Virus record (IMG/VR): IMGVR_UViG_3300037258_000590
Span: 1 to 64,000 of that record
Strand: one strand, 5' to 3'
Length of the DNA stretch: 64,000 bases
Positions 1-60,300 of the stretch are shown here, one piece after another (position 1 is the first letter of the stretch; each line of letters starts with the position of its first letter). A program made the position numbers and the translations under genes. Below the pieces are notes generated by a model. The model was not told the origin of the DNA, made no database searches, and saw only the letters and a program-made list of their open reading frames with translations.

Positions 1-256
1 GAGGACCGTAGCCCTGCCCCTGGGGAGGACCGTAGCCCTGCCCCTGGGGAGGACCGTAGCCCTGCCCCTGGGGAGGACCGTAGCCCTGCCCCTGGGGAGG
101 ACCGTAGCCCTGCCCCTGGGGAGGACCCGGGGGCGGCGCGTATCCCTGCCCCTGGGGAGGACCGTAGCCCTGCCCCTGGGGAGGACCGTAGCCCTGCCCC
201 TGGGGAGGACCGTAGCCCTGCCCCTGGGGAGGACCCGGGGGCGGCGCGTATCCCTG
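1..256 (+). repeat. Coding tandem repeat: eight 24-bp units (GAGGACCGTAGCCCTGCCCCTGGG) interrupted by two 36-bp variant units
   Basis: Perfect units at 1-120 (x5) and 157-228 (x3); variants start at 121 and 229 (second one partial); reads PQGQGYGP on the minus strand. Confidence 0.95.
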
Positions 257-337
257 CGCTGGCGGTCCGTAACCGGGCTGGGCAGGCGCGTAACTCTGGC
301 CGGGCGGCGGGCCGTAGCCCTGCTGCGGGTAGTTCAC
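1..337 (-). CDS. Partial CDS (runs off window) with long Pro/Gln/Gly/Tyr low-complexity N-terminus
   Basis: GTG at 337 with AGGAGGAG at 343-350; open to the window edge: MNYPQQGYGPPPGQSYAPAQPGYGPPAQGYAPPPGP(PQGQGYGP)n; absent from the ORF track because no stop lies in the window. Confidence 0.85.
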   Translation of the reverse strand, partial: MNYPQQGYGPPPGQSYAPAQPGYGPPAQGYAPPPGPPQGQGYGPPQGQGYGPPQGQGYGPPQGQGYAPPPGPPQGQGYGPPQGQGYGPPQGQGYGPPQGQGYGPPQGQGYGP

Positions 338-354
338 GTGTACTCCTCCTGAGA

Positions 355-456
355 ACTGAGACTGAGACTGAGACTGAGACTGAGACTGAGACTGAGACTG
401 AGACTGAGACTGAGACTGAGACTGAGACTGAGACTGAGACTGAGACTGAGACTGAG
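355..456 (+). repeat. Perfect hexanucleotide microsatellite (ACTGAG)17
   Basis: 17 identical units counted, ending 5 nt from the SD of the 337 gene on the minus strand. Confidence 0.95.
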
Positions 457-568
457 ACTAAGAAATGACCTCTCCGCGCTCCGGGGTCGCCCGCGGTGCA
501 CGTAGGACCCTAACGATACATCACCGCTGTGTTATTTCAGACTGCGTGGTACAGCGTAGGACTTGACG

Positions 569-3451
569 TCAGCGCTGGACCGGTGAGTGACCAGGGCAGC
601 CCGGGTTGTAGTCCCGGGCAGATTCAGGCCGGAAAAACGGGCAGAAGTAACAAATGTCATCTCCCGGGGCAATCGGGACATTCCCGATGTTGATCTGGCC
701 GGCCAGCACCCGCCGGGCGACCTCGCGCCGGAACGCCGTCTGGTCCAGTACGTCCGCGATCAGCGCGTCATCGCCGGGGCCGCAGTCGTGCGTCCACAGG
801 TACATCGAGTCCAGTGAGGATGCTGTCCGCGGCAGGGCGGCCAGGACGACGCGCCGGACCGGAAACCCGAGGTTGCGGTACCCGGCCGCGTACAGCAGCA
901 GCTGGACCTGGTAATGCCTCGGCGGCCCGGCGGCCGACATGACCTTGGCCATCGATGTCGGGCCGAGGCAGTTGTGCACCGGGATCAGCTGCTCGCCGGC
1001 CAGGTACAGATGGTCCGGGCTGTCGACGTCGATGCACCGGGTCGGCACGGACAGAACTGGCTTGATGTTCCGGACGATCCGGAACCTGGACCGTGCTGAG
1101 CCTTCCGCCCGGACCTGGGCCGCCTTGCGCTGGAGCCGGAACGGGTTCGCTCCGTGCGGCGTGAACTCTACGTAATACCCGGTCACGGGCAGGCCGGATT
1201 CCGTGGACTGGTGCGGGGCGATGTGCGCCTTCCAGCCGAGCGTGGCTGCTAGTTCAGCGACCGAGACGGCCAGGTGCTTGCTCGTTGTGCTGAATACTGC
1301 ACGCTTCCGCGGCTTGTTCCAGTTCCCGTCTGTATCCATCAGCCCTTGCAGCAGGGCCAGCCGTTGCTCGTAAGATCCGCGCAGGTATTCCGGCGGTACC
1401 TGCTTGACCCCGGTCAGGCGTCCGTGGCTGCCAGGCCATGCAGGATCACGCCACTGCAAGCCGGTTACGCGGAGTTGCCCGCTGAGCCCGTAGATGGTGC
1501 GCACGGATTTCCGCTTGCCATGGGGAGGGCTGACTGTGTAGCCGCAGGCCCGGATCTGGCCGGACAGGTCTTCTGCGTCTTTGATGCCGGCACCGATCGT
1601 GCCGCTGTGCACGCTGCCGTCTCCGAGCCAGCAGCCCAGGACGTACGGGTGCACGATCAGGTCCCGGGGAGCCAGCTCAAGCGCGCTGCCGTTGCGGAGC
1701 CGGAGCTGTCGTTGCGGTCTAGCCGTGGCGGACCATACGCGATCAGCCGCGTGTGCCGTGGGCAGCAGCATGACCGGCCATTGCGGCTTCCCGGCGGCCT
1801 CATACGGGATTTCCTGCACGTCATCGGTGATCAGCTCGCTGCCGTCATCGAACGTGATCCGGTAGCAGTCCCGGTACTGGGCGGGGTACGTCCGGGTGAC
1901 CTGGCACGGGCGCCCGTCCGTGCCGAACACGGTGTCCCCGGGCTGGAGCTGCCCCATGGTCGTCCAGCCGTCCGGCGTGGCGACCGGAGTGGAGACGAAA
2001 ATTCCTTTCCAGTCACATACTAGTTCTTCCACCCCGTCGTACAGGTCAGCCGTTCCCGGGTAGAGCGGATGGGGGGAGACGCGCTTCTCGGTGATCCACC
2101 GGTCGTAGCCGTTGAGGCCGTTCTCCAGGGAGAAGTGCTCGGCCAGCCACGCGTGCACCGCGGTCCCGACGATCGACGGCCACGGGTCTGCCACGTGATT
2201 CGTGACCGGCTCGCCCGCGAACTTTCCGACGACCTGGCGATCGCAATTTCCTGTCATCAGGTCGTCGGCCAGAGCGAAGGCTCCGGCTTCTCCGGTTATC
2301 GCGCAATACACGGATTCCGTGCGTCCTGTAGCCCGGACAGACTCCACGATCCAGAAAGGGTCACGTTCAGGGGCGAGCGAGGCGGTCTGGGCACGCTGAG
2401 CGTGCCGCGTTGTCAGGAAGAACCAGTCTGGCAGGTCGCGGCGGCGCAGGCTCAGCTTGTATAGCGGGGTTTCGGCTGTCGCCGGCCTGGTTCCGGAGAT
2501 GCCGAGCCTCATGTTTTCCTGTATCAGGCCGTACCCGATCCCGCAGACCGCCGCCGCCTCCCGGACGAACTCCAGGTGTCCCCGGTACGCTGAGGAGATT
2601 GAGCAGTGCCCGTCGTCGGTGACACACCCGTCCGCGGCAAAGTAGCCTGCGAGCCAGCTCATGAGGAACGATGCGGATTCATCAATGGGCGGAAGCCTCT
2701 TCCAGAAACGCGGCAGCCTCTCCACCATGGAATGTGCATGAGCGTGAGAAGGATCGTGACGCACCTTGTGCTCACCTGGGAAGAATCGCAGCATCGCCTC
2801 ATCCTTACCGTTGTGGTAGAGGATGAGCCTCGCGGCGCGATGCGTGCTGCCATTACTGCCTTTCGTGCCATCTCCGAACACGAAGCCCTGGGCTACGGCG
2901 AAAGACATCATCGTGGCGCTCTTAGGCTTGGCCTGACGTAGCTGCGCCAGGCGGTGACCAGGGCGCAGATCGCGAGTCTCCAGTTTCTGCTGCTTGCGGT
3001 TTTTCTGGCCCTGACCTGACCAGTACGAGCGGTACCAGTGGTGCTCAGCTGTAGCGAACACGATTTTGCTGTCCCTGTTCCGGCGCAGGGTGATCTCGTA
3101 AAGTTCCTGCTCGCCGAAATACTCGACTGGCACTTGGCAGAATTTGCCCCATCGTTTACGGATGTCGCTGCCCTTGTAGCGCAGGGGAACGAGGAGTTCG
3201 GCGCTGCCATTTTTAGCCAGTTCACGGATTGCCCGGATGCCCTGGCGGGTAACTACTTCCGTCTCCCCGCTGAGGCACGCGCTCCCGATCTCGGACGGCC
3301 CGAGGGTGCGCTGCACGCTGCGGGGCATCCGGTGCGCCTGGCGGATGATGATCTCGCGCAGCTCACGGGCGTACCGGGCCCCGAACGCGGTATTGCTGCC
3401 CGCGATGGCCGGAGTGGTACCCATGAACTGCCCTGGTGTCATGGTGGTCAT
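569..3451 (-). CDS. Cas4/RecB-like PD-(D/E)XK exonuclease with 4Fe-4S cysteines, interrupted by two inteins (spliced product about 271 aa)
   Basis: Exteins rejoin as GPSEIGSA-CDRQ, GTAVH, GTADL..D, DWK-CLG, YQVQLLLYAAG and C-terminal CYFCPF..C. Confidence 0.88.
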   Translation of the reverse strand: MTTMTPGQFMGTTPAIAGSNTAFGARYARELREIIIRQAHRMPRSVQRTLGPSEIGSACLSGETEVVTRQGIRAIRELAKNGSAELLVPLRYKGSDIRKRWGKFCQVPVEYFGEQELYEITLRRNRDSKIVFATAEHHWYRSYWSGQGQKNRKQQKLETRDLRPGHRLAQLRQAKPKSATMMSFAVAQGFVFGDGTKGSNGSTHRAARLILYHNGKDEAMLRFFPGEHKVRHDPSHAHAHSMVERLPRFWKRLPPIDESASFLMSWLAGYFAADGCVTDDGHCSISSAYRGHLEFVREAAAVCGIGYGLIQENMRLGISGTRPATAETPLYKLSLRRRDLPDWFFLTTRHAQRAQTASLAPERDPFWIVESVRATGRTESVYCAITGEAGAFALADDLMTGNCDRQVVGKFAGEPVTNHVADPWPSIVGTAVHAWLAEHFSLENGLNGYDRWITEKRVSPHPLYPGTADLYDGVEELVCDWKGIFVSTPVATPDGWTTMGQLQPGDTVFGTDGRPCQVTRTYPAQYRDCYRITFDDGSELITDDVQEIPYEAAGKPQWPVMLLPTAHAADRVWSATARPQRQLRLRNGSALELAPRDLIVHPYVLGCWLGDGSVHSGTIGAGIKDAEDLSGQIRACGYTVSPPHGKRKSVRTIYGLSGQLRVTGLQWRDPAWPGSHGRLTGVKQVPPEYLRGSYEQRLALLQGLMDTDGNWNKPRKRAVFSTTSKHLAVSVAELAATLGWKAHIAPHQSTESGLPVTGYYVEFTPHGANPFRLQRKAAQVRAEGSARSRFRIVRNIKPVLSVPTRCIDVDSPDHLYLAGEQLIPVHNCLGPTSMAKVMSAAGPPRHYQVQLLLYAAGYRNLGFPVRRVVLAALPRTASSLDSMYLWTHDCGPGDDALIADVLDQTAFRREVARRVLAGQINIGNVPIAPGDDICYFCPFFRPESARDYNPGCPGHSPVQR
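971..2005 (-). mobile_element. Intein 2 (345 aa), class-3-like, Gly at position 1, with LAGLIDADG endonuclease
   Basis: GIFVSTPVATPDGWTTMG aligns with block A; LGCWLGDG and QGLMDTDG motifs; block F TRCIDVDSPDHLYLAG; ends IPVHN followed by Cys+1. Confidence 0.88.
2246..3277 (-). mobile_element. Intein 1 (344 aa) with LAGLIDADG homing endonuclease
   Basis: Starts CLSGETEVVT; block B TAEHHW; GFVFGDG and AGYFAADG motifs; ends TGN followed by Cys+1. Confidence 0.9.
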
Positions 3452-3675
3452 GAGCTGATCCTGTCATCGGGCAGTGACATTTTCCGGCGGGACCGCCGCA
3501 GCCGCCACGCTCGCGGCCAGTCTTGCGGCCACGCTCGCGGCCAGAGCAGGAGCGGGTGGCGGCGCAGCCCGGCCGCGAAAGCCGGCCAGCCGTGCACGCC
3601 TGGCCACGCGGCCAGGGCGGTGCGTACCGCGACGGGTACCGCGATGACAGCCAGGAGACGCCGCCGGGCCTTCAT
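3448..3675 (-). CDS. Hypothetical protein, Trp/Arg-rich with hydrophobic N-terminus
   Basis: ATGA overlaps at both ends (3672-3675, 3448-3451). Confidence 0.6.
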   Translation of the reverse strand: MKARRRLLAVIAVPVAVRTALAAWPGVHGWPAFAAGLRRHPLLLWPRAWPQDWPRAWRLRRSRRKMSLPDDRISS

Positions 3676-3878
3676 GCGGCTGCCGCCAGGGAGCGCGGCC
3701 TGGCGCGGCACCTGCGCCGGTTGCGTTCTTGCAGCTTGCGGATGGCGTACTCCGACAGGTGCCTGCCCCCCGGGTGCCCGGCTGGGCGCCAGCACACCGG
3801 GAACACGTCCGTGCGTGACTGGCCAGCCAGTTCGCGGTACCTGACCGGATGGCGGCAGCGGGTGTCCGGGTCGATCAT
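3672..3878 (-). CDS. Hypothetical protein (MIDPDTRC...)
   Basis: ATGA overlaps with both neighbours. Confidence 0.6.
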   Translation of the reverse strand: MIDPDTRCRHPVRYRELAGQSRTDVFPVCWRPAGHPGGRHLSEYAIRKLQERNRRRCRARPRSLAAAA

Positions 3879-4243
3879 CCCAGGCCTCCCCGGACCGGGC
3901 TGAGTACCCAGTGACCGCCGAATCTCGCGTATTTCACGTACAGCACCGGGTCCTCGCGTCTCATCAGCCTGGTATCCAGCCGGGCGGTCTCCACCCAGGT
4001 CAGGTGCATCGCGGGCCGGTGCTGGCTGCCCGCGATGTCGAATGCGGCAACGCCCGGATGCGCCTGGGTCAGTTCGGCTTTGATCCGGTCGCCGATGGAT
4101 TTCACCCGTTCTTCGGCTTCGTCGGCGGCGGCCTTGGCTGCTCGCTGCTGGTCCAGCAGCTGTTCGAGCAGCCCTCCCGGCGCCGGCGTGATGGCCATCC
4201 GGATAGGTGCGGGCGCGGTGGCGGTGGCGGGCTGAGCGTCCAT
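3875..4243 (-). CDS. Hypothetical phage protein with N-terminal coiled coil
   Basis: AGGAGA SD before ATG 4243; helical LLEQLLDQQRAAKAAADEAEERVK segment. Confidence 0.8.
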   Translation of the reverse strand: MDAQPATATAPAPIRMAITPAPGGLLEQLLDQQRAAKAAADEAEERVKSIGDRIKAELTQAHPGVAAFDIAGSQHRPAMHLTWVETARLDTRLMRREDPVLYVKYARFGGHWVLSPVRGGLG

Positions 4244-5917: not shown

Positions 5918-6189
5918 CCGCCGCTGAAGACCTGGCTGCCGTGCTGGACGTGCTCGTGCAGGGAATAGCTGCCGCTGACGGGGAAACCAGCCGTTTGCTG
6001 GCCAGCTGCCAGCGCTGCCGTAACCGCCTGCTGTACCTGCTGGACCATCCGGCCGCCGCAGCCGGCTACCGGATGCTCGTCCAGGCGATCGCCGCGCTGC
6101 GCCTGAACCACGACGTCTGCCGTCGCGGCAGCCAGCACGTCACCGGGCAGGACCGGAACCGCCCGCGGATCAGGAGGGTCATGCCGTGA
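5914..6189 (+). CDS. Hypothetical protein
   Basis: ATGA/GTGA coupling. Confidence 0.7.
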   Translation: MTAAEDLAAVLDVLVQGIAAADGETSRLLASCQRCRNRLLYLLDHPAAAAGYRMLVQAIAALRLNHDVCRRGSQHVTGQDRNRPRIRRVMP

Positions 6190-6518
6190 ACACTCTCGCC
6201 GAGCTGGAAGCACGTGTCGCGAAGCTGCTGCGCTCGATCATCCCCCGGCCTGAATTCCGCGTCCCGGAAGCCCGGCTGGTAATCACCGAAGCCTGGCAAG
6301 GCGGCCGGGAGGAACTGGCCCGGGAATTCCTGCCATTGCTCAGGAAGGCCCGGGACGGCGATCGCGCGGCCTTGCTTGACGCGACGAGCCTGGCGTATTC
6401 AGTCCTGCCCTCGCCTGTCGGCGGCCCGGCAGCACGCCACGCCGCTAAGCGGGCCCGGTTCGCCGAGCTGCGGGGCGGACCTGCCGCGAATTCAGCGCAG
6501 CCGGACGGGCACCTGTGA
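6186..6518 (+). CDS. Hypothetical protein
   Basis: GTGA coupling. Confidence 0.7.
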   Translation: MNTLAELEARVAKLLRSIIPRPEFRVPEARLVITEAWQGGREELAREFLPLLRKARDGDRAALLDATSLAYSVLPSPVGGPAARHAAKRARFAELRGGPAANSAQPDGHL

Positions 6519-6967
6519 CCCCGCCTCCCGTTCCGCTGCCCGCCGACCTGCAGCGCAGGCTGGACACCCTCACCGCCAAGCCGCTGCTGCGCCGTGCCCC
6601 GCTGCTCGTCCAGGCGATCGCCACGCTCATCCGGGATGCCGCGGGCCGCCGCGGGCCGGTCATCCAGGCGGCGCTGTCCCTGGCCGAACGGCACCGCCCG
6701 GTGAACCTGGACGGTATCCAGGAGTGCGTGCGGTGCGCCCAGGACCGCCCGCACTGGCCGTGCCGCGAAGCGGTGATCGCCGCGGAGATCCTGCACGCGC
6801 TCGGGCACAAGCCGCCGTACAAGCTGCCGTGGGCGGGCGGCCCGGCGTACAGCCCGGAGCCGTCCGCCGAAGGTGAAGGCGCGGGCGGCCCGGCGAACTC
6901 GTACAACCAGGCACCGGACTGGGTGAGCGGTCCGCGCGCTCAGGTCAGCGGGAGAGGTGCGCCGTGA
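6515..6967 (+). CDS. Hypothetical protein with H..V....C..C....WPC motif
   Basis: RHRPVNLDGIQECVRCAQDRPHWPC; GTGA coupling. Confidence 0.75.
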   Translation: MTPPPVPLPADLQRRLDTLTAKPLLRRAPLLVQAIATLIRDAAGRRGPVIQAALSLAERHRPVNLDGIQECVRCAQDRPHWPCREAVIAAEILHALGHKPPYKLPWAGGPAYSPEPSAEGEGAGGPANSYNQAPDWVSGPRAQVSGRGAP

Positions 6968-7128
6968 GCATCACTGAGTACCTGGATGAGCACCCGGGCG
7001 AAACGCTCACCGAGCAGCAGATCGCGGACGGGACAGGCCAGGGCAGCCAGTTCGTCGGCGCGTTCATGCGCGCGGCGGCTGACCGGGACTGGGCTGAGCG
7101 CGTGCCCGGCGGCTGGCGGCTGCCGTGA
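6964..7128 (+). CDS. Small winged-helix-like protein
   Basis: MSITEYLDEHPGETLTEQQIADGTG...WRLP; GTGA overlaps both sides; below the ORF-track cutoff. Confidence 0.65.
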   Translation: MSITEYLDEHPGETLTEQQIADGTGQGSQFVGAFMRAAADRDWAERVPGGWRLP

Positions 7129-7280
7129 ATGCTGGCCGGGGCCACCGCCTCTTTTCCTGCTCCGCCTGGATCCGGTGCCGGCGTGACGGCAGCCTGCGGG
7201 TGCATCACGGGTACTGGCCGCGGTCAGGCATCGCGGCCTGTACCCGGGTCAGGAAAGTGATTGCGGAGACCGCGCCGTGA
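7125..7280 (+). CDS. Small hypothetical Cys/His protein
   Basis: GTGA overlaps both sides; 51 aa. Confidence 0.5.
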   Translation: MNAGRGHRLFSCSAWIRCRRDGSLRVHHGYWPRSGIAACTRVRKVIAETAP

Positions 7281-7777
7281 CCCTGCGCATGCGGCTCATG
7301 ATCACCGATGACCTGGACGAGCGCGAGAAGGACCAGTTCAACGAGGCTACGGTGACCACGGTGGTCTCGCTGGACGGGATCATCCGGGAGCTGCACCTGA
7401 CCCAGGCGCATTACGACGAGCTGGCCCGGCTCATGGGCCGGTACGTCCAGGCAGGCCACGAGCCCGGTGCCGGGCCGGTAACCGATCCGGCACCGGAGTC
7501 TCCGCGCGGCGGCCAGGGCTCCCGGCGGGAGATCCCCGGCACCCGGGAGTTCCTGGCCCGGGTCCGCGCGTACGCCGCGGCGCACGGTATCGAGGTGCCC
7601 ACAGCCGGCGGCAGGCGCGCGACGTACAAATATTCCGCGGAGTTGCAGGTGAGCATCGCTCAGGACCTGAGGCGCCGGGCGGAAGGCGGGGACCCGCAGG
7701 CTGCCGCGGACCTGGTGATGGCGCGCCGGATCAGCTTCTTGCCCGCTGAGCCCGGCGGGGCGCCTCCGGATGCGTGA
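7277..7777 (+). CDS. lsr2: Lsr2-like nucleoid-associated/xenogeneic-silencer protein
   Basis: N-terminal LMITDDLD...VSLDG..RELHLTQAHYDELARLMGRYVQAG matches the Lsr2 dimerisation domain; C-terminal RAYAAAHGIEV matches helix 1 of the Lsr2 DNA-binding domain. Confidence 0.8.
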   Translation: MTLRMRLMITDDLDEREKDQFNEATVTTVVSLDGIIRELHLTQAHYDELARLMGRYVQAGHEPGAGPVTDPAPESPRGGQGSRREIPGTREFLARVRAYAAAHGIEVPTAGGRRATYKYSAELQVSIAQDLRRRAEGGDPQAAADLVMARRISFLPAEPGGAPPDA

Positions 7778-7898
7778 TCTTGTCTCTGCGCGCCCGGTTC
7801 AGAATACTGGGACCAGGATGGTTGTTGATACGCTTGGAGACTAGAGAAGACGCAGGAGCAGTGCCCTCGGGTGCCGTCTCCGGATAACGGAGCGAGAT

Positions 7899-8807
7899 GT
7901 GGCGGAGGAAAGGCAGGAACGGCCCGCGCAGGCGGCTATCAGGCGCCCTGCGTCGGGCATCTCCATCGATCCTGGCCGGCTGGCCTGGTGGCGGGAAAGC
8001 CGTGGATGGTCTCGCCAGGACCTCTCTGATGCGGTCACCGCGCTCAGCCTCACCGATGAAGACGACGCCCCGCTGACCGTGACACGCGATGCGATCGCCA
8101 AGATCGAGAACGGCGAGCGCAAACCCAAGGCGCGCACTGTCCGGGCGCTGTGCGCTGCGCTGAGCAGGGTCCTGGCGCCGCAGTATGATGCTGCCGGCAC
8201 GTACACCGGGGACACCTGGGAACCGGCGCAAGCGCCCGTCAGCCCGCTGGATCTCATGCCGAGCACGACTCCGCTGACCCCGCATGAGGACGCGATGGCC
8301 CGTCGTCTCCGGCTTTCGCACAATCGTGACCTGCGCGCTTTCGCCCGCGAATACGGAATTCAGTACAAGAACCCGGTGTCGCAGCGCGTGTACTACTCCC
8401 GTCCGCTTCGCATCGCGTATAACCTGCTCATCGCCGGGGCGTCAGCAGAAGCGCTGGCCGCTGCCGTAGCGGGCGCTGTGGCGGCCAGCGCGGGCGGCCC
8501 TGCAGCCGGAGACAGCCTGGACCTGGATGACCTGGACGAACGAGACAGCATTACTGAACTGGACCTGTCTGCCCGTACGCATAACGCGCTCATCCGCGGC
8601 GAGCTGCCCGGCGGTCACTGGCAGCCCGTCCGCACGATCGGAGAGCTGACCGTCTGTACCGCCGCCGAGCTGTCCGCCATCCGGAATTTCGGCCTCACCT
8701 CGCTAGCGGAAGTCCGGGAAAACCTGGCCGCCGCCGGGTTCGCGCTCAAAGGCGAGGAACCGGCTAGCCGCGGGACGTCACCGGACCCTGCGCTGCTGGC
8801 CTCGTAA
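7899..8807 (+). CDS. XRE-family HTH regulator fused to an Lsr2-like domain and an RNA polymerase alpha C-terminal domain
   Basis: LAWWRESRGWSRQDL...IAKIENGERKP (XRE); SITELDLSARTHNALIR...TIGEL....AAELSAIRNFGLTSLAEVRENLAAAG (alpha-CTD). Confidence 0.88.
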   Translation: MAEERQERPAQAAIRRPASGISIDPGRLAWWRESRGWSRQDLSDAVTALSLTDEDDAPLTVTRDAIAKIENGERKPKARTVRALCAALSRVLAPQYDAAGTYTGDTWEPAQAPVSPLDLMPSTTPLTPHEDAMARRLRLSHNRDLRAFAREYGIQYKNPVSQRVYYSRPLRIAYNLLIAGASAEALAAAVAGAVAASAGGPAAGDSLDLDDLDERDSITELDLSARTHNALIRGELPGGHWQPVRTIGELTVCTAAELSAIRNFGLTSLAEVRENLAAAGFALKGEEPASRGTSPDPALLAS

Positions 8808-8819
8808 GAGCGGCTTGCG

Positions 8820-10340
8820 ATGGCGGCTGTCATCACCGGAACGCGGTGGCTCATCGCAGGTGCACTCATCGTCATGCTCGTGCTCCGGCTGGCCGGAGGC
8901 CGCGTCAGCGCGATGGCTGGCTGGGCACTGATAATCGCGGCTGCGGCGTGCGCAGCTGCCGGAGAAATCAGGAGGACCTATGGGATTCATCGGAGAGCGT
9001 ACGATCCGGCGTGTGTACGAGCCGCTGCCGGACGAGCGGGATGTGCCAGCGGAGGAGCCGGTTTCTGTTCCTGCGCCATCTGTGCCGGCAGTTCCTGTCT
9101 CAGCTTGACCTACGGGCTCTGGCAGCTGATGCCCAGAACTTTGCTCCAGCCGTCCGCTCCGGTAACAGGCCAGTTTCCGCTGCGTTTCGTGCCTGCGCGC
9201 ATCATGCGCTCTGGTGGCAGCGGGTTCGTCGCAGGAGCTGCCGGCCGTCTGCCGCCCGCCCTCAACCTGGCTGCCGGCGGGGGTTCTGGTGCTGGCAGTT
9301 ACTCCGCAGGGGCTGCTGGCGGGGGTTCTGGTGCCGGCGGCAGTTACTCCGCAGGGGCTGCTGGCGGGGGTTCTGGTGCCGGCGGGTCCGTCGCAGGGGC
9401 TGCCGGCGGCTCAGGAAGCGGGTATGCGTACGGGGGTCTCGTCAACGCCGGCGGGTCAGCGGGTGGCGGCCGTTATCCCGCGGGCAGCGTGAAACAAGGC
9501 CTGAACGACTTCGACGGCGCGGAGTTCGTGGCCGGAACCGTGCGCGGCTACCGGTGGTGGTCGCTGGTTGCCCCGCCGCTGCACCTGAGCCCGGCCAAAG
9601 CGGCGGATAGCTGGTATCCGGGGTTGCTGAACGGCATGCGCGGGCCGTGGCAGCCGGGCCTCAATCACGCGAGGTGCAACAGCGCCCGCCAGCACCAGCC
9701 CGCGGAGATCCCTGCCTCCGGCTGCGGCTGCGGGTGGTGGGCGTACTGGCAGATCCAGCACCACGACCTGAGCCTGTCCGGCGTCCAGATCCCGGTTGTC
9801 GGCGTGATCGAAGGCCGCGGCCAGGTCCTGATCGGGGAGCGGGGCTTCCGCGCGCAGCAAGCCACGGTCGTCGCCCTGCACCTGCCGTTCCGGATCGTCC
9901 CCGACCTGCCCGCGGACTGCGAGCCCGCACGGGACGCAGTACTGCTGAACTTCCGGGAGCAGCCGGAATACGGGCGGCACAATCCGTGGTGGAATCACCC
10001 GCTGTTTACCGGCGCCGTGCATAACCTCAGCACGGGCCGGCCATCAGGGCCCCCCGGCCGGGTGCAGCCACCAGAAGCCGGCCCTCGCAGGCAGCCTACC
10101 GCGGCTGAGGTCATCGGAGCGCAGGACCAGGCTGAAGCATGGATGGCGGTTATCGGGGATTACCTGGACCAGGCGTACCCGGACGCCCGGATGTTCGAGA
10201 CCCTGGACGCCATGCTGGCCGTATTCCCGCCCGCCCCGCAGAGCGTGCCCCGGGAAACGCAATGTTACATGTGCCAGGAATGGTTCCCCGACATACACGA
10301 TCACTACATGTCGTGCGGTAAGTTCCGTTTCGGCGCCTGA
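8820..10340 (+). CDS. Hypothetical protein: possible N-terminal TM helices, Gly-rich repeats, conserved RGYRWW...C.CG.WAY...G.RA domain, C-terminal Zn finger; true start may be 9129
   Basis: Open frame of 506 codons; a nested ORF with a strong SD at 8980 argues that the start is ambiguous. Confidence 0.75.
   Translation: MAAVITGTRWLIAGALIVMLVLRLAGGRVSAMAGWALIIAAAACAAAGEIRRTYGIHRRAYDPACVRAAAGRAGCASGGAGFCSCAICAGSSCLSLTYGLWQLMPRTLLQPSAPVTGQFPLRFVPARIMRSGGSGFVAGAAGRLPPALNLAAGGGSGAGSYSAGAAGGGSGAGGSYSAGAAGGGSGAGGSVAGAAGGSGSGYAYGGLVNAGGSAGGGRYPAGSVKQGLNDFDGAEFVAGTVRGYRWWSLVAPPLHLSPAKAADSWYPGLLNGMRGPWQPGLNHARCNSARQHQPAEIPASGCGCGWWAYWQIQHHDLSLSGVQIPVVGVIEGRGQVLIGERGFRAQQATVVALHLPFRIVPDLPADCEPARDAVLLNFREQPEYGRHNPWWNHPLFTGAVHNLSTGRPSGPPGRVQPPEAGPRRQPTAAEVIGAQDQAEAWMAVIGDYLDQAYPDARMFETLDAMLAVFPPAPQSVPRETQCYMCQEWFPDIHDHYMSCGKFRFGA
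8980..9108 (+). CDS. 42-aa acidic Pro-rich peptide (MGFIGERTIRRVYEPLPDERDVPAEEPVSVPAPSVPAVPVSA)
   Basis: AGGAGG directly upstream of ATG 8980; lies in the +1 frame inside the 8820 ORF. Confidence 0.6.
   Translation: MGFIGERTIRRVYEPLPDERDVPAEEPVSVPAPSVPAVPVSA
9276..9420 (+). repeat. Three imperfect 42-45-bp coding repeats (GGGSGAG(G)SYSAGAA)
   Basis: Direct repeats visible in both DNA and translation. Confidence 0.8.
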
Positions 10341-28302: not shown

Positions 28303-28890
28303 TCACCAGTTGACGTGCAGGTAGAAACTGGGCGCGGACCAGGCGTCATCATGCCACCCGACCCGCGTACCCGTGTGCTGGGCGCCGAATGTGGTTGCCC
28401 GCCATTTCGTCACGATCTCCACGTGGTAGGGCGCGGATACCGGGCCCCACAACGCCAGGTCGCCGCGCCGCGGGTGATAGGTGATGGTGAACCGGGTGCC
28501 GATCTCGGCTGCGATGTCATAGGTGTCCCGCGGCCAGTTCTTCAGCCCGATCGACGTGGCCGACCAGGCGACCAGGCCCGAGCAGTCAAAATACGACGGG
28601 CCGGCCGCGCCGTAGACGTACCAGTCCCCGGTCCGGGTCTCGGCCCGGTCCAGGATCCGCTGGCCCACCGAGATCGCAGTGGCTTTCGAGTCCGCGGTGG
28701 CCATGGTTTTCGCGCTCATGGCGGCTATGGCCTGCGTACTCGTGGCGGCTATGATCTGCGTACTCGTGGCGGCTATGGTCTGCGTACTCGTAGCGGCCAG
28801 GGCCGGCAGAGCAGACAGCGCTGAGCCAGCGGCGAGCAGTGCGGCCAGGATCACGATGAATGCGCCGAGACGGCGCAAGGCGGCGGCCAT
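28303..28890 (-). CDS. Secreted NlpC/P60 (C40) cell-wall peptidase
   Basis: Signal peptide; YVYGAAGPSYFDCSGLV, PRDT, RRGDL, HVEI; TGATG coupling. Confidence 0.9.
   Translation of the reverse strand: MAAALRRLGAFIVILAALLAAGSALSALPALAATSTQTIAATSTQIIAATSTQAIAAMSAKTMATADSKATAISVGQRILDRAETRTGDWYVYGAAGPSYFDCSGLVAWSATSIGLKNWPRDTYDIAAEIGTRFTITYHPRRGDLALWGPVSAPYHVEIVTKWRATTFGAQHTGTRVGWHDDAWSAPSFYLHVNW
28721..28797 (-). repeat. Three 24-bp coding repeats (AATSTQxI) in the NlpC/P60 linker
   Basis: Direct repeat GCGGCTATGxxCTGCGTACTCGTR. Confidence 0.85.
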
Positions 28891-54745: not shown

Positions 54746-55187
54746 GCGAGAACTCCGCTATCTCGCGCCCTGGGGCCGGGCCGTCCGTCCCGCTGCCTAG
54801 CCAGGATAACTCCAGTGCGTGCAAGCCGCCGCTCGATACGGCAACCAGGATGCGGACCAGCTCGAAGCACTGGCTGTCGGTGAACTCACCGGTCTCGCGC
54901 CAGGCCCGGTGCCAGCGTGCATGGATCTCCGCCATGGTGCCGACCAGCTCCTCGCCGGCGGCATCGATACCCTGAACCTGGCTGAGCAGCTGTTCCAGGT
55001 CTGGCAGCCCGGAATCCGGCGGCTCGGCATCCGGCCGCGGAGTGTCTGGGCCTGCCTGCGCATCCGGCCGCGGAGTGCCTGGGCCTGCCTGTGCATCCGG
55101 CCGCGGAGTGCCTGGGCCTGCCTGCGCATCCGGCGGGCGCCATGAGCGCGGCTCAGGCTCATACTCAGGCTCAGGGGCGCCATTCAC
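54711..55187 (-). CDS. Hypothetical protein with PDAQAGPGTPR repeats
   Basis: GGAGG SD, GTGA coupling; three 33-bp repeats at 55027-55134. Confidence 0.6.
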   Translation of the reverse strand: MNGAPEPEYEPEPRSWRPPDAQAGPGTPRPDAQAGPGTPRPDAQAGPDTPRPDAEPPDSGLPDLEQLLSQVQGIDAAGEELVGTMAEIHARWHRAWRETGEFTDSQCFELVRILVAVSSGGLHALELSWLGSGTDGPAPGREIAEFSRARAHVTSVPD

Positions 55188-57309: not shown

Positions 57310-60300
57310 TCAGGATACGCCGGGGAAGGTCTGGAACGGCTGGGTCACGCCAGCTACCGCGGTGCCGCGTGCGGTAACTGAAGCCGCTGACACAGAAATC
57401 TTCGTGACACCGTAAGCGGTGCTGAAGCCCTTCACCTGCGGCGGATGAGTCAGGCCCGTCGCGGTCAGCCTCGCGGTGCCGGCCAGTGCTCCGGCGCCTT
57501 GCTGCGCAGCCAGCGTAATCAGGGCTGCGATCCCGCCCAGAGCTGCCGCAGATCGCAGTACAGTGCCGGAGCCGAGTGACCCGGCAGCCCCGAGCACGGC
57601 TCCGGCACCGCCGGCGGCAGCCCCGGCCGCGGTCAGCGCTCCGGCTGCACCGAGCAGGCCGGCGCCCGCGATGCCGCCTCCGGATGCGAGCGAAGCTGTC
57701 GCGCTCAACGAGGTAACCGCCCCGGGCACGGCAGCGCTCGCGAGCGATCCCGCGGCAGCAAGCGCCGACCCGCTGGACGGGATCGCCCCGAGCGATCCTG
57801 CGGCGCCGATCGTCGTAACGACGCCGAGGGCGGCTGCGCTCGCGAGCGATCCCGCACTGCTGAGGATTCCACCCGGGCCCTGAACGGAAACGCTGCCAAG
57901 CGATCCGGCCGCGGCCAAGGCCGCCGGAGCTGCGATCGCGGATACCGCTGCCAGCGAGCCAGCGGCAGCCAGGCCGGAACCGCTGGCCGGATTGGCGCTG
58001 AGCGACCCGGCTGCAGTCAGTGTCGTGATAGCACTGAGCACCGCCGCCGCGGTCAGCGAGCCCGCTGCGGCTAGAGCAGCCGGGGCCGCCACGGCTGAGG
58101 AAGCAGCCAGGAGCCCGGCCGCGGCCAGCACAGCGGGTACCCCGGCGATTACCGCGGGCGCGGCCAGCGAGCCAGCCCCGCTGAGCACCGCGCCGCCCGC
58201 CGGGGTTCCGGTCAGTGACCCGGCCGCGGCCAGGGCGGTAATCGCGCCGAGGACACCGGCGGCCGACAGCGCTCCCGCACCCCCGAGCGAACCAGCTGCG
58301 CCCTGTGTCGCGACGTCACCCAGAGAACCTGTCGCGCTCAGCGTGACAAGCGCTGCCTGGACCGCCATGACGCCCAGTGATGCCGCACCGCCGAGCGTGA
58401 CACCAGCGCTCAGGATAACCGCGGTACTCAGTGATCCGGCTGCCGCCAAGGCTGCAGGCGCGGCCAGAGCCGCTGCGGTACCCAGCGAACCCCCGCCGCT
58501 GAGCACGGAACCCATGACCGAAGCTGCCGCCAGCGATCCCGCGGCCCCGGTCGTTGCCCCCGCGCCCTGGCCGGCGCCGTTGCCCGCAGACCCTGCCGCC
58601 ATCAGGACCGCAGGCGCGCTGAGGACGCCCGCTGTAGCCAGCATCCCCGCCGCGCCGAGCGTGCCGCCCGCACCCTGGATCGTGACCGTACCGAGCGACC
58701 CAGCCGCGCCGAGCGTGCCGCCCGCACCCTGGATCGTGACCGTACCGAGCGACCCAGCCGCGCCGAGCGTAACGCCTGCACCCTGGATCGTGACAGCATT
58801 CAGCGATCCCGTCGCGCTGAGCGTGACAATTGCGTTCTGGGCTGCCGTGGCTGCCAGTGAGCCAGCCGCGCCAAGCGTGACGCCCGCACTCTGGGCTGCT
58901 GCGGCGGCCAGTGATCCGGCAGCCGCCAGTCCTGCGGGCGCGCCGAGCATTTCTGCGCTGGCTAGTGACCCGGCCGCGCCCAGGGCAGTGATCGCGCCGA
59001 GCATTTCTGTGCTGGCTAGTGACCCGGCCGCGGCCAGGGCGGTAACGGCGCCCTGCAGGGCAGCCGGGGCTAGCGATCCAGCGCCGCCGAGCAGGCCTCC
59101 GGCATCCTGGACGGCGGCATTACCAAGCGAAGCTGCCGCACCGAAGGCCGTGCCCGCACCCTGGGTGGCGGCTGTGGCAGCCGATCCGGCGGCGCTGAGA
59201 GCCGCGCCCGCGCTCTGAGTGGCTGCCGTGGCAACCGACCCCCGGGCGGGCAGCGTGGCGATGCCCTGCAGGGCAGTCGGGGCAGCGAGGATGAGCACCC
59301 AGTCCGGGTCGCCCTGGCTGTTGTTTCCCCAGGTGCTGGAGTTGTACGACGAACCGGCCGTGACTGAGGTTTTCGCCCCGGTGATCGGGTCCCCCCGGTA
59401 CGCCTGGTATCCGGAGACCATCTTGGCCTGGTCAATGCCGATGGTCGTGGCGTGCGACAGGTAGATCAGTGCCAGGCTGGAACCCGAGCCGCTGTCCGGG
59501 GTCCGGCTCGCGGTGACGAACGAATCGGTCGTCGCGGCTTCGTACTGGCCGGAACCGCCGCCCGAGACGAACGTGGCCGCCCGCGAGCCCCGGCCGCTGG
59601 TGACCAGCGCCGATGCGGTGTCCGGCATCAGGGCCTGCCAGCCGGGCAGCGATTCGACCAGCGTGCGGATGTTCGCGGCGTTGTTGGCGTAGAACCAGTC
59701 GGTAGAGGAAGCAGCCAGCGCGGTAGCGGCCCATTGCCAGGTTGACTCAGAACCTTGCACGACACCGCGGGCGCCCGACGTGATCGCGTGCCAGGCGTCC
59801 TGCCTGAAAGCCCGGTCAAAAGCTGTAGAACCAGTGCCGCCTGCGTAAAGCGGGCCGCCCTGGTAAAAATACCCGTCGAGCTGGATAACCGGAATAGGAT
59901 CAGGCTCGCCCCAGGCGTCCTCTATACCTAGGTACGTGAGGTTATATGTGTAATTCCCGTTAAAGGCGGCATGGTTATTCCCCCAGTACTGGACCGTGCC
60001 GGTGGTACCCGTACCGAGGTCTTCACGGGAATCAGATTCCGCGTAATTGTGGATGCTGATGATGTGCGTATCGCCGCCGCCGCGCAGCCCGGTCAGCAGC
60101 GATTCATATAGCGTGTCCGTTGCTCCGGGGCTTCCGCCCCCGCTTCCGAGCGTGCCGCCAGAATTGCCGAAATAGTCATTCCCGACCATCCAGATTATGT
60201 TCTTGGTGGTCGCGTACCGGGCAGCGAGAGCGGCGCCGTACTGGCCGAACTGGGTTGCGGTCAGTGAGGTTAGCGCTCCGCCCGTGGCGAAATCTCCGGG

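What the first reader, a model, noticed from the sequence alone, without database searches (positions are those of the whole stretch)
355..456. Perfect (ACTGAG)17 microsatellite wedged against a ribosome-binding site
Seen: 102 bp of pure hexamer repeat in a gene-dense phage genome, ending 5 nt from the AGGAGGAG SD of the 337 gene. On the minus strand a GTG near 500 opens a frame (MHRGRPRSAERSF-(LS)n-SQEEYT) running through the repeat, and its TGA overlaps the downstream GTG (GTGA), the coupling pattern used across this genome. Hexamer gain or loss keeps that frame. Inference: a slippage-tunable leader or poly-Leu-Ser peptide, an iteron-like protein-binding array, or part of a replication origin.
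Basis: partly seen in the sequence, partly recalled or inferred. Interest (0 to 1): 0.6.

Follow-up and report, generated by a model that had tools for sequence, protein, structure and literature searches.

The report
Expanded hexamer repeat in phage leader
A perfect 17-copy six-base repeat sits just in front of the ribosome-binding site of a conserved, probably DNA-binding, gene in a 210-kb soil phage; it is a recent expansion of a short repeat that related phages carry in 3-5 degenerate copies, and is most likely non-coding DNA made by replication slippage that at most tunes expression.

Summary
(ACTGAG)17 is exact at 355-456. On the transcribed minus strand it reads (CTCAGT)17 and ends 5 nt from AGGAGGAG and the GTG at 337.

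The window starts a 210,383-bp, 67% GC virus record from soil metagenomes. The tract lies in a 231-nt spacer between an intein-carrying Cas4/RecB-like exonuclease gene and a gene for a Q/G/Y/P-rich protein with an OB-like core.

Eleven related contigs keep this gene order with spacers of 134-179 nt (one of 76). Most share a promoter-like block, the AGGAGGAG site and, directly before it, three to five degenerate CAGTYN units. The window has expanded that proto-repeat to 17 perfect units.

The poly-Leu-Ser ORF is probably not a gene: its frame relation to the main gene differs among relatives, the peptide is not conserved, and it uses the genome's rarest Ser codon 18 times. The origin and iteron readings are not supported.

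The genome holds a second perfect hexamer array, (AAGGCG)13, also abutting a ribosome-binding site, and 21 strong tandem arrays.

Best reading: a slippage-made, probably length-unstable leader microsatellite that may grade translation. Copy-number variation and expression could not be tested.

The parts
355..456 (-). Perfect microsatellite: (CTCAGT)17 on the transcribed strand, (ACTGAG)17 on the + strand
349..463 (-). Whole array including degenerate edge units (TAGTCT at the 5' edge, CAGTTCT at the 3' edge); in the CAGTCT register it runs in phase into CAGGAG of the ribosome-binding site
   Evidence: TRF; sequence
342..349 (-). Shine-Dalgarno AGGAGGAG, conserved as AGGAGGA(G/A) in 10 of 11 relatives (the most divergent, L038, has AGAGGAGA)
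2..337 (-). 5' part of the downstream gene (GTG at 337). The product has Q/G/Y/P-rich tails and an OB-like core. The gene runs over the contig junction to G000 209085-210383 (= L002 8703-10001)
334..501 (-). Mechanical ORF MHRGRPRSAERSF(LS)17SQEEYT with a GTGA overlap; judged not to be a conserved coding gene
513..542 (-). Conserved promoter-like block: GTCTGAAATAACACA (542-528), then a -10-like TATCGT (518-513), which is TATAGT in most relatives
   Evidence: no consensus sigma-70 hit
569..3451 (-). Upstream gene: Cas4/RecB-like exonuclease, 960 aa, with two intein-like insertions (aa 60-402 and 483-827)
1..257 (-). 24-bp (108-bp super-unit) tandem array encoding GYGPPQGQ repeats in the N-terminal tail of the downstream gene; it contains the 127-bp terminal overlap of the record

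Best explanation
The tract is a non-coding microsatellite in the 5' leader of a conserved phage gene. That gene encodes an OB-fold, probably single-strand nucleic-acid-binding, protein and lies between an exonuclease gene and an SNF2 helicase gene.

Shown:
- Phages of this clade have, directly 5' of the AGGAGGAG ribosome-binding site, a short run of three to five degenerate CAGTYN hexamers, in phase with CAGGAG.
- In this phage one unit (CAGTCT) has been amplified to 17 perfect copies. This lengthens the segment before the ribosome-binding site from about 18-25 nt to about 109 nt, and the spacer from about 140 nt to 231 nt.

Inferred:
- The amplification arose by replication slippage. This genome also carries a second perfect hexamer array next to another ribosome-binding site and many perfect longer tandem duplications.
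- The array is tolerated here because hexamer steps change neither a reading frame nor the promoter geometry.
- Its purity suggests a young or still-slipping array, so the population is probably heterogeneous in unit number.
- Its effect, if any, is quantitative. It is a G-poor, weakly structured spacer or standby platform that separates the ribosome-binding site and start codon from the structured upstream leader, grading translation rather than switching it.
For: - Exact tract and its position relative to the ribosome-binding site.
- Eleven related contigs keep the order exonuclease, spacer, this gene, SNF2 helicase, with spacers of 134-179 nt (76 in one) against 231 nt here.
- Alignments show the conserved GT(C/A)TGAAATAAC ... 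TATAGT block, the conserved AGTnnCAGT core and the ribosome-binding site. They also show unit-step differences among relatives; for example, L032 has one more CAGTCC unit than L020.
- Second array, (AAGGCG)13, abuts GGGGAGCTGATG, and the same 42-nt junction block occurs unexpanded 200 nt away.
- The genome has 21 TRF arrays with score >= 100, many 100% perfect; three of them lie in or before this one gene.
- Codon usage: AGT is the rarest Ser codon (2.1 per 1000), and every frame through the tract uses a rare Ser codon.
- The tract is weakly structured. The DNA minimum free energy is 0 to -9 kcal/mol, and in the 213-nt leader the centroid structure leaves it unpaired.
- In thermodynamic models of the natural leaders, the start codon is open in the window (about 0.69 unpaired) but nearly fully paired in six of nine relatives.
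- More distant homologues (Micromonospora-type) have a plain 15-18-nt spacer, so the leader is a clade-specific addition.
Against: - No transcription start, no RNA data and no read-level length distribution are available. 'Leader', 'unstable' and 'tunes translation' are therefore inferences.
- The promoter-like block does not reach the sigma-70 consensus scan.
- The conserved AGTnnCAGT core hints at sequence-specific function, which a pure by-product model does not explain.
- The predicted long-range pairing of the leader's 5' end with the start codon has no compensatory changes. RNAalifold finds only a weak consensus structure.
- The difference in start-codon accessibility may come from other substitutions, not from the tract.
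Confidence: 0.6

Rival explanations
1. RNA-protein lattice. The CAGU-periodic, C/U-rich, weakly structured segment before the ribosome-binding site is a binding platform for a single-strand nucleic-acid-binding protein. The binder could be the gene's own OB-fold product (autogenous translational repression, as with T4 gene 32) or a host factor. The 17-unit expansion would change the set-point.
For: - The AGTnnCAGT core is conserved as strongly as the ribosome-binding site across relatives, while the rest of the leader varies.
- The product's core models with pLDDT 86.6 as beta1-3, helix, beta4-5, and its weak structural matches are almost all SSB, RPA, PriB or PrgE OB folds.
- No canonical SSB family hit exists in the 210-kb genome.
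- The motif occurs nowhere else in the genome, as expected for a gene-specific operator.
Against: - The structural matches are weak (Z <= 5.3, Foldseek E >= 0.01), and no sequence family matches.
- There is no binding evidence.
- No TRAP or cold-shock-domain protein is encoded.
- The most divergent jumbo-clade relative (L038) has a different, CA-rich leader, and distant homologues have none.
Confidence: 0.12
2. Translated upstream ORF. Ribosomes start at GTG 501, read (Leu-Ser)17 and terminate at the TGA that overlaps GTG 337. They then re-initiate on, or open up, the downstream start (termination-reinitiation coupling, possibly sensitive to the supply of the rare AGU-decoding tRNA).
For: - The ORF and the GTGA overlap exist.
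- The GTG column is invariant in the four-sequence alignment, and in L003 a 20-codon ORF from that GTG also ends in an ATGA overlap.
- The phage encodes its own tRNA-Ser(GCU) and tRNA-Leu(GAG).
- At the second array, a real upstream gene does read through the repeat and stops on the next start.
Against: - In L020, L023 and their kin, the same GTG is in frame with the main gene and has no stop. The frame relation differs among relatives through 2-nt and 10-nt indels, and the peptides are unrelated.
- There is no credible ribosome-binding site before GTG 501. It lies 11 nt past the -10-like hexamer, too far for a leaderless start (inference).
- The ORF holds 18 AGT codons, at 2.1 per 1000 genome usage.
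- All three frames of this strand are stop-free inside the tract, so an open frame is expected by construction.
Confidence: 0.1
3. DNA-level element: an iteron-like protein-binding array, a replication origin or a packaging signal.
For: It is a tandem array in a non-coding spacer inside a replication/recombination gene cluster (exonuclease, OB-fold protein, SNF2 helicase, primase-like gene nearby).
Against: - The unit is 6 bp, so successive sites fall on different faces of the helix. Known iterons are 17-22 bp (established knowledge).
- The GC-skew extremes are at 76 kb and 153 kb.
- Relatives with the same spacer lack the array.
- The contained pentamers are neither avoided nor enriched genome-wide.
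- No AT-rich unwinding region is adjacent.
Confidence: 0.04
4. Assembly artefact: the tract is absent, or its length is wrong, in the real phage.
For: - It lies 355 nt from the contig end, and the record's 'direct terminal repeat' is itself inside a 24-bp tandem array.
- The independent samples X2-X4 have no contig reaching the tract.
Against: - The tract (102 bp) is shorter than the 127-bp terminal overlap taken as k.
- An independent k=31 contig at 48x runs from unique flank 39 nt on into the tract.
- The flanks align colinearly with relatives that carry the proto-repeat at exactly this point.
Confidence: 0.05

Closest known systems
Moraxella catarrhalis uspA2 AGAT(n) tract upstream of the ORF (PMC7302503, citing Attia and Hansen 2006)
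   Same: A heteropolymeric simple-sequence repeat of about 12-19 units lies upstream of an ORF. It is not in a reading frame, and its unit number grades expression rather than switching it on or off.
   Different: That tract is a tetramer in a bacterial chromosome, 132 bp upstream, and its effect on mRNA level has been measured. Here the unit is a hexamer in a phage, the array abuts the ribosome-binding site, and no expression or heterogeneity data exist.
Intergenic TAACTGA direct repeats of Beggiatoaceae, Cyanobacteria and Bacteroidetes (PMC4679880)
   Same: Short tandem direct repeats lie within a few nucleotides upstream of start codons. [quoted passage not shown] Arrays of up to 43 copies occur in some genomes.
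   Different: Those are heptamers present at up to 169 loci per genome, usually replacing a canonical ribosome-binding site, and sense-oriented with stop codons. Here there is a single locus (plus one unrelated hexamer), a strong ribosome-binding site is retained, and all three frames on the transcribed strand are stop-free.
Phage contingency loci (bioRxiv 10.1101/2025.10.21.683753)
   Same: These are slippage-prone simple repeats in phage genomes that generate population heterogeneity.
   Different: Those are short tracts (6 bases or more) inside coding genes that act by reversible frameshift. A hexamer array in a leader cannot frameshift.
T4 gene 32 translational operator (established knowledge, not tested here)
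   Same: An unstructured leader segment next to the ribosome-binding site of a phage single-strand-binding protein gene.
   Different: The gene 32 operator is A/U-rich with a 5' pseudoknot, and cooperative binding has been demonstrated. Here the product is only tentatively an OB-fold binder, and no binding is known.
TRAP binding sites: 9-11 (G/U)AG triplets with 2-3-nt spacers (established knowledge)
   Same: NAG triplets (here CAG) recur every 6 nt, next to or overlapping a ribosome-binding site.
   Different: The triplet is CAG, the weakest for TRAP. No TRAP homologue is encoded in the phage, and the host lineage is not known to have one.
Plasmid and phage iterons
   Same: Tandem direct repeats in a non-coding spacer near replication genes.
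   Different: The unit is 6 bp against 17-22 bp, there is no adjacent unwinding element, and the array is absent from relatives.

Membership tests
Microsatellite / simple sequence repeat | Head-to-tail copies of a unit of 1-6 bp, far more copies than chance gives | tested here: met
   17 exact ACTGAG units at 355-456
Microsatellite / simple sequence repeat | Unit number differs between related genomes | tested here: met
   Relatives have 3-5 degenerate CAGTYN units at the homologous place and differ among themselves by about one unit
Phase-variable contingency locus (on/off switch) | The repeat lies in an ORF with a unit that is not a multiple of 3, or between the -35 and -10 elements, so that a unit change switches expression | tested here: not met
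   A hexamer keeps every frame. The tract lies downstream of the -10-like hexamer (518-513) and upstream of the ribosome-binding site
Phase-variable contingency locus (on/off switch) | Length heterogeneity within one population | not testable with these tools
   Read laying refuses the tract, only k=31 contigs are held, and no raw reads are available
5'-leader repeat 'rheostat' (uspA2 type) | The repeat lies between the transcription start and the start codon | tested here: inconclusive
   A conserved promoter-like block lies upstream, but there is no consensus hit and no RNA run
5'-leader repeat 'rheostat' (uspA2 type) | Expression level depends on unit number | not testable with these tools
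   Only a thermodynamic comparison of natural leaders was possible
Leader peptide / translationally coupled upstream ORF | Start codon with a ribosome-binding site, and frame and stop-start relation conserved in relatives | tested here: not met
   The frame relation differs (an overlapping stop in the window and L003; in frame and open in L020 and L023). The peptides are unrelated. Rare codons are used
Iterons / replication origin | Repeats of about 17-22 bp, an adjacent AT-rich unwinding element, and a strand-skew switch | tested here: not met
   6-bp unit; skew extremes at 76 and 153 kb; no AT-rich segment next to the tract
Known RNA families (Rfam 15) | A match to a curated covariance model | tested here: not met
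   No match at E <= 1 in 250-700, both strands
SSB-type OB-fold protein (downstream gene product) | OB topology (beta1-3, helix, beta4-5) and structural similarity to SSB/RPA | tested here: inconclusive
   The topology is present at pLDDT 86.6. Matches are nearly all SSB, RPA, PriB or PrgE but weak: Z <= 5.3, E >= 0.01. There is no Pfam, PHROG or PDB sequence hit
TRAP-type NAG-repeat operator | A TRAP (TrpBP) protein is available to bind it | tested here: not met
   No PF02081 match in the phage genome; the host genome is unknown

The most novel reading that the evidence does not exclude
The CAGU-periodic segment before the ribosome-binding site is a cis-acting lattice on the mRNA for cooperative binding by the gene's own OB-fold product, giving gene-32-like autogenous control in a jumbo actinophage. 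Slippage in the array (3-5 units in relatives, 17 here, presumably variable within the population) would then act as a heritable, reversible rheostat for the level of the phage's single-strand-binding protein. That would be a non-frameshift kind of phage contingency locus.
Probability: 0.08. Interest if true: 0.7.

Novelty: new member of a known kind. Interest (0 to 1): 0.4.

Why it matters
- Long perfect microsatellites are rare in phage genomes. This unit reaches 5 or more copies in only 15 of about 2.9 million IMG/VR contigs, and none of those is as long.
- Phage slippage loci described so far are short coding tracts that act by frameshift. A hexamer array that abuts a ribosome-binding site, and that grew from a clade-conserved proto-repeat, would be a natural case for asking whether leader length grades translation in actinophages.
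- It would also serve as a ready-made variable-number marker for tracking this phage in soil.
- For genome curation, the record's 'terminal repeat' and the tract both sit in tandem-repeat DNA, where assembled copy numbers should not be trusted without long reads.
- If it is only a mutational by-product, it still shows that this phage lineage has an unusually high rate of tandem duplication.

Tried and rejected
- **Near-identical phages.** There is no megablast match in INPHARED.
- **Reads.** As the tool advised, I laid 397-2800 instead. Only k=31 contigs are held, so unit-number heterogeneity is untestable. X2-X4 do not reach the tract. No variants were seen.
- **Promoter and terminator consensus scan.** No hits in 1-4000.
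- **Rfam.** No match.
- **Conserved leader structure.** RNAalifold gave a weak consensus (-5.96 kcal/mol) with no real covariation. The hand-specified helix between the 5' CCCAUG and the start-codon region is 80% paired but has no compensatory change. This is inconclusive.
- **Regulon idea.** The CAGTYYCAGT motif occurs only at chance level elsewhere in the genome.
- **Hairpin-driven slippage.** As DNA the tract folds at 0 and -9 kcal/mol, which is not convincing.
- **Restriction-site decoy.** CTCAG, GTCTC and the other pentamers contained in the tract are at expected frequency genome-wide.
- **In-frame N-terminal extension of the main gene through the tract.** It is blocked by a TAG at the 5' edge of the array, and there is no start codon inside.
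- **Identity of the downstream protein.** There were no hits from Pfam, PHROGs or the PDB sequence profile, and no reliable lead from the atlas feature search (best hit Arpin at 0.90, judged chance; Phi29 SSB only at 0.83). The atlas fold search returned only unnamed viral clusters.
- **Artificial unit numbers.** I did not build an in-silico series with artificial unit numbers; only natural leaders were folded.

Full report
**1. Where the window lies**

The window is bases 1-64000 of a single-contig IMG/VR virus record of 210,383 bp and 67% GC. Four soil metagenome runs hold it.

The record's 'direct terminal repeat' is an exact 127-bp overlap that lies wholly inside a 24-bp tandem array. I read this as a circular closure at the assembler's largest k, made at a repeat (inference). 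The gene that starts at 337 on the minus strand continues in frame over the junction into the end of the record (L002 8703-10001). This supports the two ends being adjacent but leaves the number of 24-bp units open.

INPHARED holds no near match. The closest named phage for the neighbouring exonuclease is the 200-kb Streptomyces phage Frankenweenie, at 33% identity. Homologues of the downstream protein at about 50% identity sit in Micromonospora and Micromonosporaceae genomes, so the host is probably an actinomycete of that kind (inference).

**2. The observation**

(ACTGAG)17 is exact at 355-456. TRF extends the array, with degenerate edge units, to 349-463. All neighbouring genes run on the minus strand, where the tract reads (CTCAGT)17 or, in another register, (CAGTCT)n.

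On that strand the order is as follows:
- the stop codon of a 960-aa exonuclease gene, ending at 569;
- a 231-nt spacer containing the tract;
- a degenerate unit, CAGTTCT;
- CAGGAGGAG, then 5 nt;
- the GTG at 337.

Rarity:
- The genome contains only one other long perfect microsatellite.
- Only 15 of about 2.9 million IMG/VR contigs have 5 or more ACTGAG units, with a maximum of 14. These contigs have unrelated GC contents (0.25-0.63; the 14-unit one 0.32), and some are giant-virus bins.

Reality of the tract:
- At 102 bp the tract is shorter than the 127-bp overlap taken as k, so single k-mers spanned it.
- A k=31 contig of the probable source run (48x) continues 39 nt beyond position 469, that is 12 nt of flank plus about 27 nt of repeat.
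The part 397-2800 was laid as the tool advised.
- Runs X2-X4 hold the same phage without differences, but their short contigs stop before the tract. There is therefore no independent confirmation, and no information on length heterogeneity.

**3. The neighbours**

*Upstream gene.* The upstream gene is a Cas4/RecB-like exonuclease (phrog_1674; tblastn hits). It is interrupted by two intein-like insertions, one with a LAGLIDADG domain. Its homologues in all relatives are 261-280 aa.

*Downstream gene.* The product has an N-terminal tail of GYGPPQGQ repeats, a core of about 170 aa, and a C-terminal tail of 16-aa PQYQQQYQAPPPDQGQ-type repeats encoded by a 48-bp unit.
- It has no Pfam, PHROG or PDB sequence match.
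- With 57 homologues as the alignment, the core models at mean pLDDT 86.6 as beta1-beta2-beta3, helix, beta4-beta5.
- Foldseek and VIA-align give only weak matches (E >= 0.013; Z <= 5.3), but these are almost all SSB, RPA, PriB, PrgE and similar OB folds.
- The ESM Atlas fold search returns only unnamed viral clusters.
- The genome has no canonical SSB family hit.
- The order exonuclease, this gene, SNF2 helicase holds from the jumbo clade to Micromonospora-type elements.

I take the product to be a candidate single-strand nucleic-acid-binding or annealing protein, with confidence about 0.5.

**4. Comparative anatomy of the spacer**

One IMG/VR relative (core 73% identical), four further metagenome loci (three distinct sequences) and nine look-ups by protein identity gave eleven homologous spacers. 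They measure 134-179 nt, with one of 76 nt, against 231 nt in the window.

Most relatives share the following (L037 with its 76-nt spacer lacks the first two blocks, and L038 has its own CA-rich leader):
- GT(C/A)TGAAATAAC;
- 10-11 nt further on, GTATAGT (the window has TATCGT at 518-513);
- a leader of about 90-100 nt;
- directly before CAGGAGGAG, three to five degenerate hexamers of the form CAGTYN.

Examples of the hexamer run:
- L020: CAGTCT CAGTTC AAGTCG;
- L032: the same with an extra CAGTCC;
- L036: CAGTCA CAGTCT CAGTCAC CAGTAT;
- L037: CAGTCG CAGTAG CAGTAG.

The columns AGT..CAGT are invariant in nine sequences, as is the ribosome-binding site. The segment between the conserved CATT(T/C)C and CAGGAGG is 18-25 nt in relatives and 109 nt in the window.

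The tract is therefore a lineage-specific amplification of one unit of a clade-conserved proto-repeat, and the relatives themselves differ by roughly one-unit steps. The units are in phase with CAGGAG. L037 and L034 carry CAGTAG next to CAGGAG, which suggests the run began as slipped copies of the ribosome-binding-site hexamer (inference).

The conserved block is unique in the genome and, in IMG/VR, is found only in the one relative. It does not reach the sigma-70 consensus scan. I call it promoter-like on conservation, AT-richness and spacing only.

More distant homologues have a 15-18-nt spacer with a plain ribosome-binding site. The long leader is thus an addition of the jumbo-phage clade.

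**5. Is the poly-Leu-Ser ORF a gene?**

Probably not.
- The GTG at 501 is conserved as nucleotides. From it, L003 has a 20-codon ORF ending in an ATGA overlap, but L020 and L023 have a frame continuous with the main gene and no stop.
- The relation changes through a 10-nt and a 2-nt indel.
- The peptides are unrelated.
- No convincing ribosome-binding site precedes GTG 501. It lies 11 nt after the -10-like hexamer, too far for a leaderless start (inference).
- The ORF uses AGT, the rarest Ser codon of the genome (2.1 per 1000 in 27 long ORFs), 18 times. The other two frames use TCA or TCT, which are also rare.
- All three frames of this strand are free of stops inside the tract, so an open frame is expected by construction.
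- The frame that would extend the main protein is closed by a TAG at the 5' edge of the array.

**6. A second array, and the genome's habit**

(CGCCTT)13 lies at G000 203053-203130. On the minus strand it reads (AAGGCG)13 and runs straight into GGGGAGCTGATG, the ribosome-binding site and start of a small phage zinc-finger gene (PF24623).

Here a real upstream gene, for a small Cys-rich protein with a weak, sub-threshold zinc-ribbon match, reads through the array as a C-terminal (Ala-Lys)13. It uses common codons and stops on the next start. The same 42-nt junction block recurs 200 nt downstream with only one to two units. This is again an expansion of a proto-repeat beside a ribosome-binding site.

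The genome has 21 TRF arrays with score >= 100, many 100% perfect. Three of them are in or before the one gene studied here. The simplest reading is a lineage with frequent slippage or tandem duplication, whose products survive where they do no harm.

**7. Physical properties**

- As DNA the tract is essentially unstructured: 0 and -9.2 kcal/mol, with the centroid unpaired.
- As isolated RNA it can form a long hairpin of 2-bp stacks with single mismatches (-20 kcal/mol). In the 213-nt leader, however, the centroid leaves it open.
- In partition-function models of the natural leaders, starting from an assumed transcription start, the start codon is about 0.69 unpaired in the window and 0.71 in L003. 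It is 0.00-0.12 unpaired in six relatives, where a 5' CCCAUG pairs with CAUGGG at the start. Accessibility of the ribosome-binding site is 0.34 against 0.17-0.26 in the closest relatives.
- That helix is 80% paired across the alignment but has no compensatory change, and RNAalifold finds only a weak consensus. This remains only a lead.

**8. DNA-level readings**

- The cumulative GC skew peaks at 76 kb and bottoms at 153 kb, not near the tract.
- The unit is 6 bp, and no AT-rich segment adjoins it.
- Relatives lack the array.
- The pentamers it contains are at expected frequency genome-wide.

An origin, iteron array or restriction decoy is not supported.

**9. Verdict**

*Shown:*
- The microsatellite is real and exact at the assembly level.
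- It sits in a conserved spacer between a promoter-like block and a strong ribosome-binding site.
- It is derived from a clade-wide run of 3-5 degenerate hexamers.
- Most likely it does not encode a conserved peptide (section 5).

*Inferred:*
- It arose by slippage.
- It is probably unstable in length.
- At most it grades translation of an OB-fold protein by lengthening a G-poor, weakly structured segment before the ribosome-binding site.

*Closest known analogues:*
- the uspA2 AGAT(n) tract (PMC7302503);
- the TAACTGA repeats before start codons (PMC4679880).

It differs from the phage contingency loci reported so far, which are short coding tracts that act by frameshift (bioRxiv 10.1101/2025.10.21.683753).

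*Most novel reading not excluded:* an mRNA lattice for the gene's own product, tuned by unit number. I put that at about 0.08.

Noticed in passing
window 569-3451 (minus strand): The Cas4/RecB-like exonuclease gene is 960 aa, against 261-280 aa in all relatives. Alignment leaves two insertions of about 343 and 345 aa (aa 60-402 and 483-827), the second with a LAGLIDADG domain. These look like two inteins in one small nuclease gene.
   Followed up: partly
window 1-257 and G000 210246-210383: The record's 127-bp 'direct terminal repeat' lies inside a 24-bp tandem array encoding GYGPPQGQ. The circular closure is therefore at a repeat, and the assembled number of units is unreliable.
   Followed up: partly
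G000 203053-203130 (L002 2671-2748): A second perfect hexamer microsatellite, (CGCCTT)13. On the minus strand it encodes a C-terminal (Ala-Lys)13 tail of a small zinc-ribbon protein and runs directly into the ribosome-binding site and start of the next zinc-finger gene. The same 42-nt junction block occurs unexpanded 200 nt downstream.
   Followed up: partly
G000 209085-210383 plus window 2-337: The downstream gene carries three separate tandem expansions in this phage: the leader hexamer x17, an N-terminal 24-bp unit x9 or more, and a C-terminal 48-bp unit x6.7. Its core is an OB-like barrel of a phage-only uncharacterised family, always found between an exonuclease gene and an SNF2 helicase gene.
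   Followed up: partly
whole genome G000; in the window e.g. 9269-9409, 28715-28797, 55027-55134, 58645-59073: There are 21 tandem arrays with TRF score >= 100 in 210 kb, several 100% perfect (35-bp x4.8, 27-bp x2.5, 30-bp x2.3). This suggests an unusually high rate of recent tandem duplication.
   Followed up: no
G000 67540-75285 (just outside the window): A cluster of 39 tRNA genes, including tRNA-Ser(GCU), tRNA-Leu(GAG) and an odd tRNA-Tyr(AUA) call.
   Followed up: no
L020, L023, L028, L032, L034 and L035 leaders (e.g. L020 3693-3796): In most relatives the 5' end of the putative leader (CCCAUG) is complementary to the start-codon region (CAUGGG), and the start codon is predicted to be almost fully paired. 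In the window and L003 it is open. There are no compensatory changes, so the pairing is unproven.
   Followed up: partly
L002 1-2274 (minus strand) and 6153-8036 (minus strand): A large primase/helicase-like ORF (758 aa or more) and an SNF2-family helicase flank the region. The tract therefore sits in the replication/recombination module.
   Followed up: no
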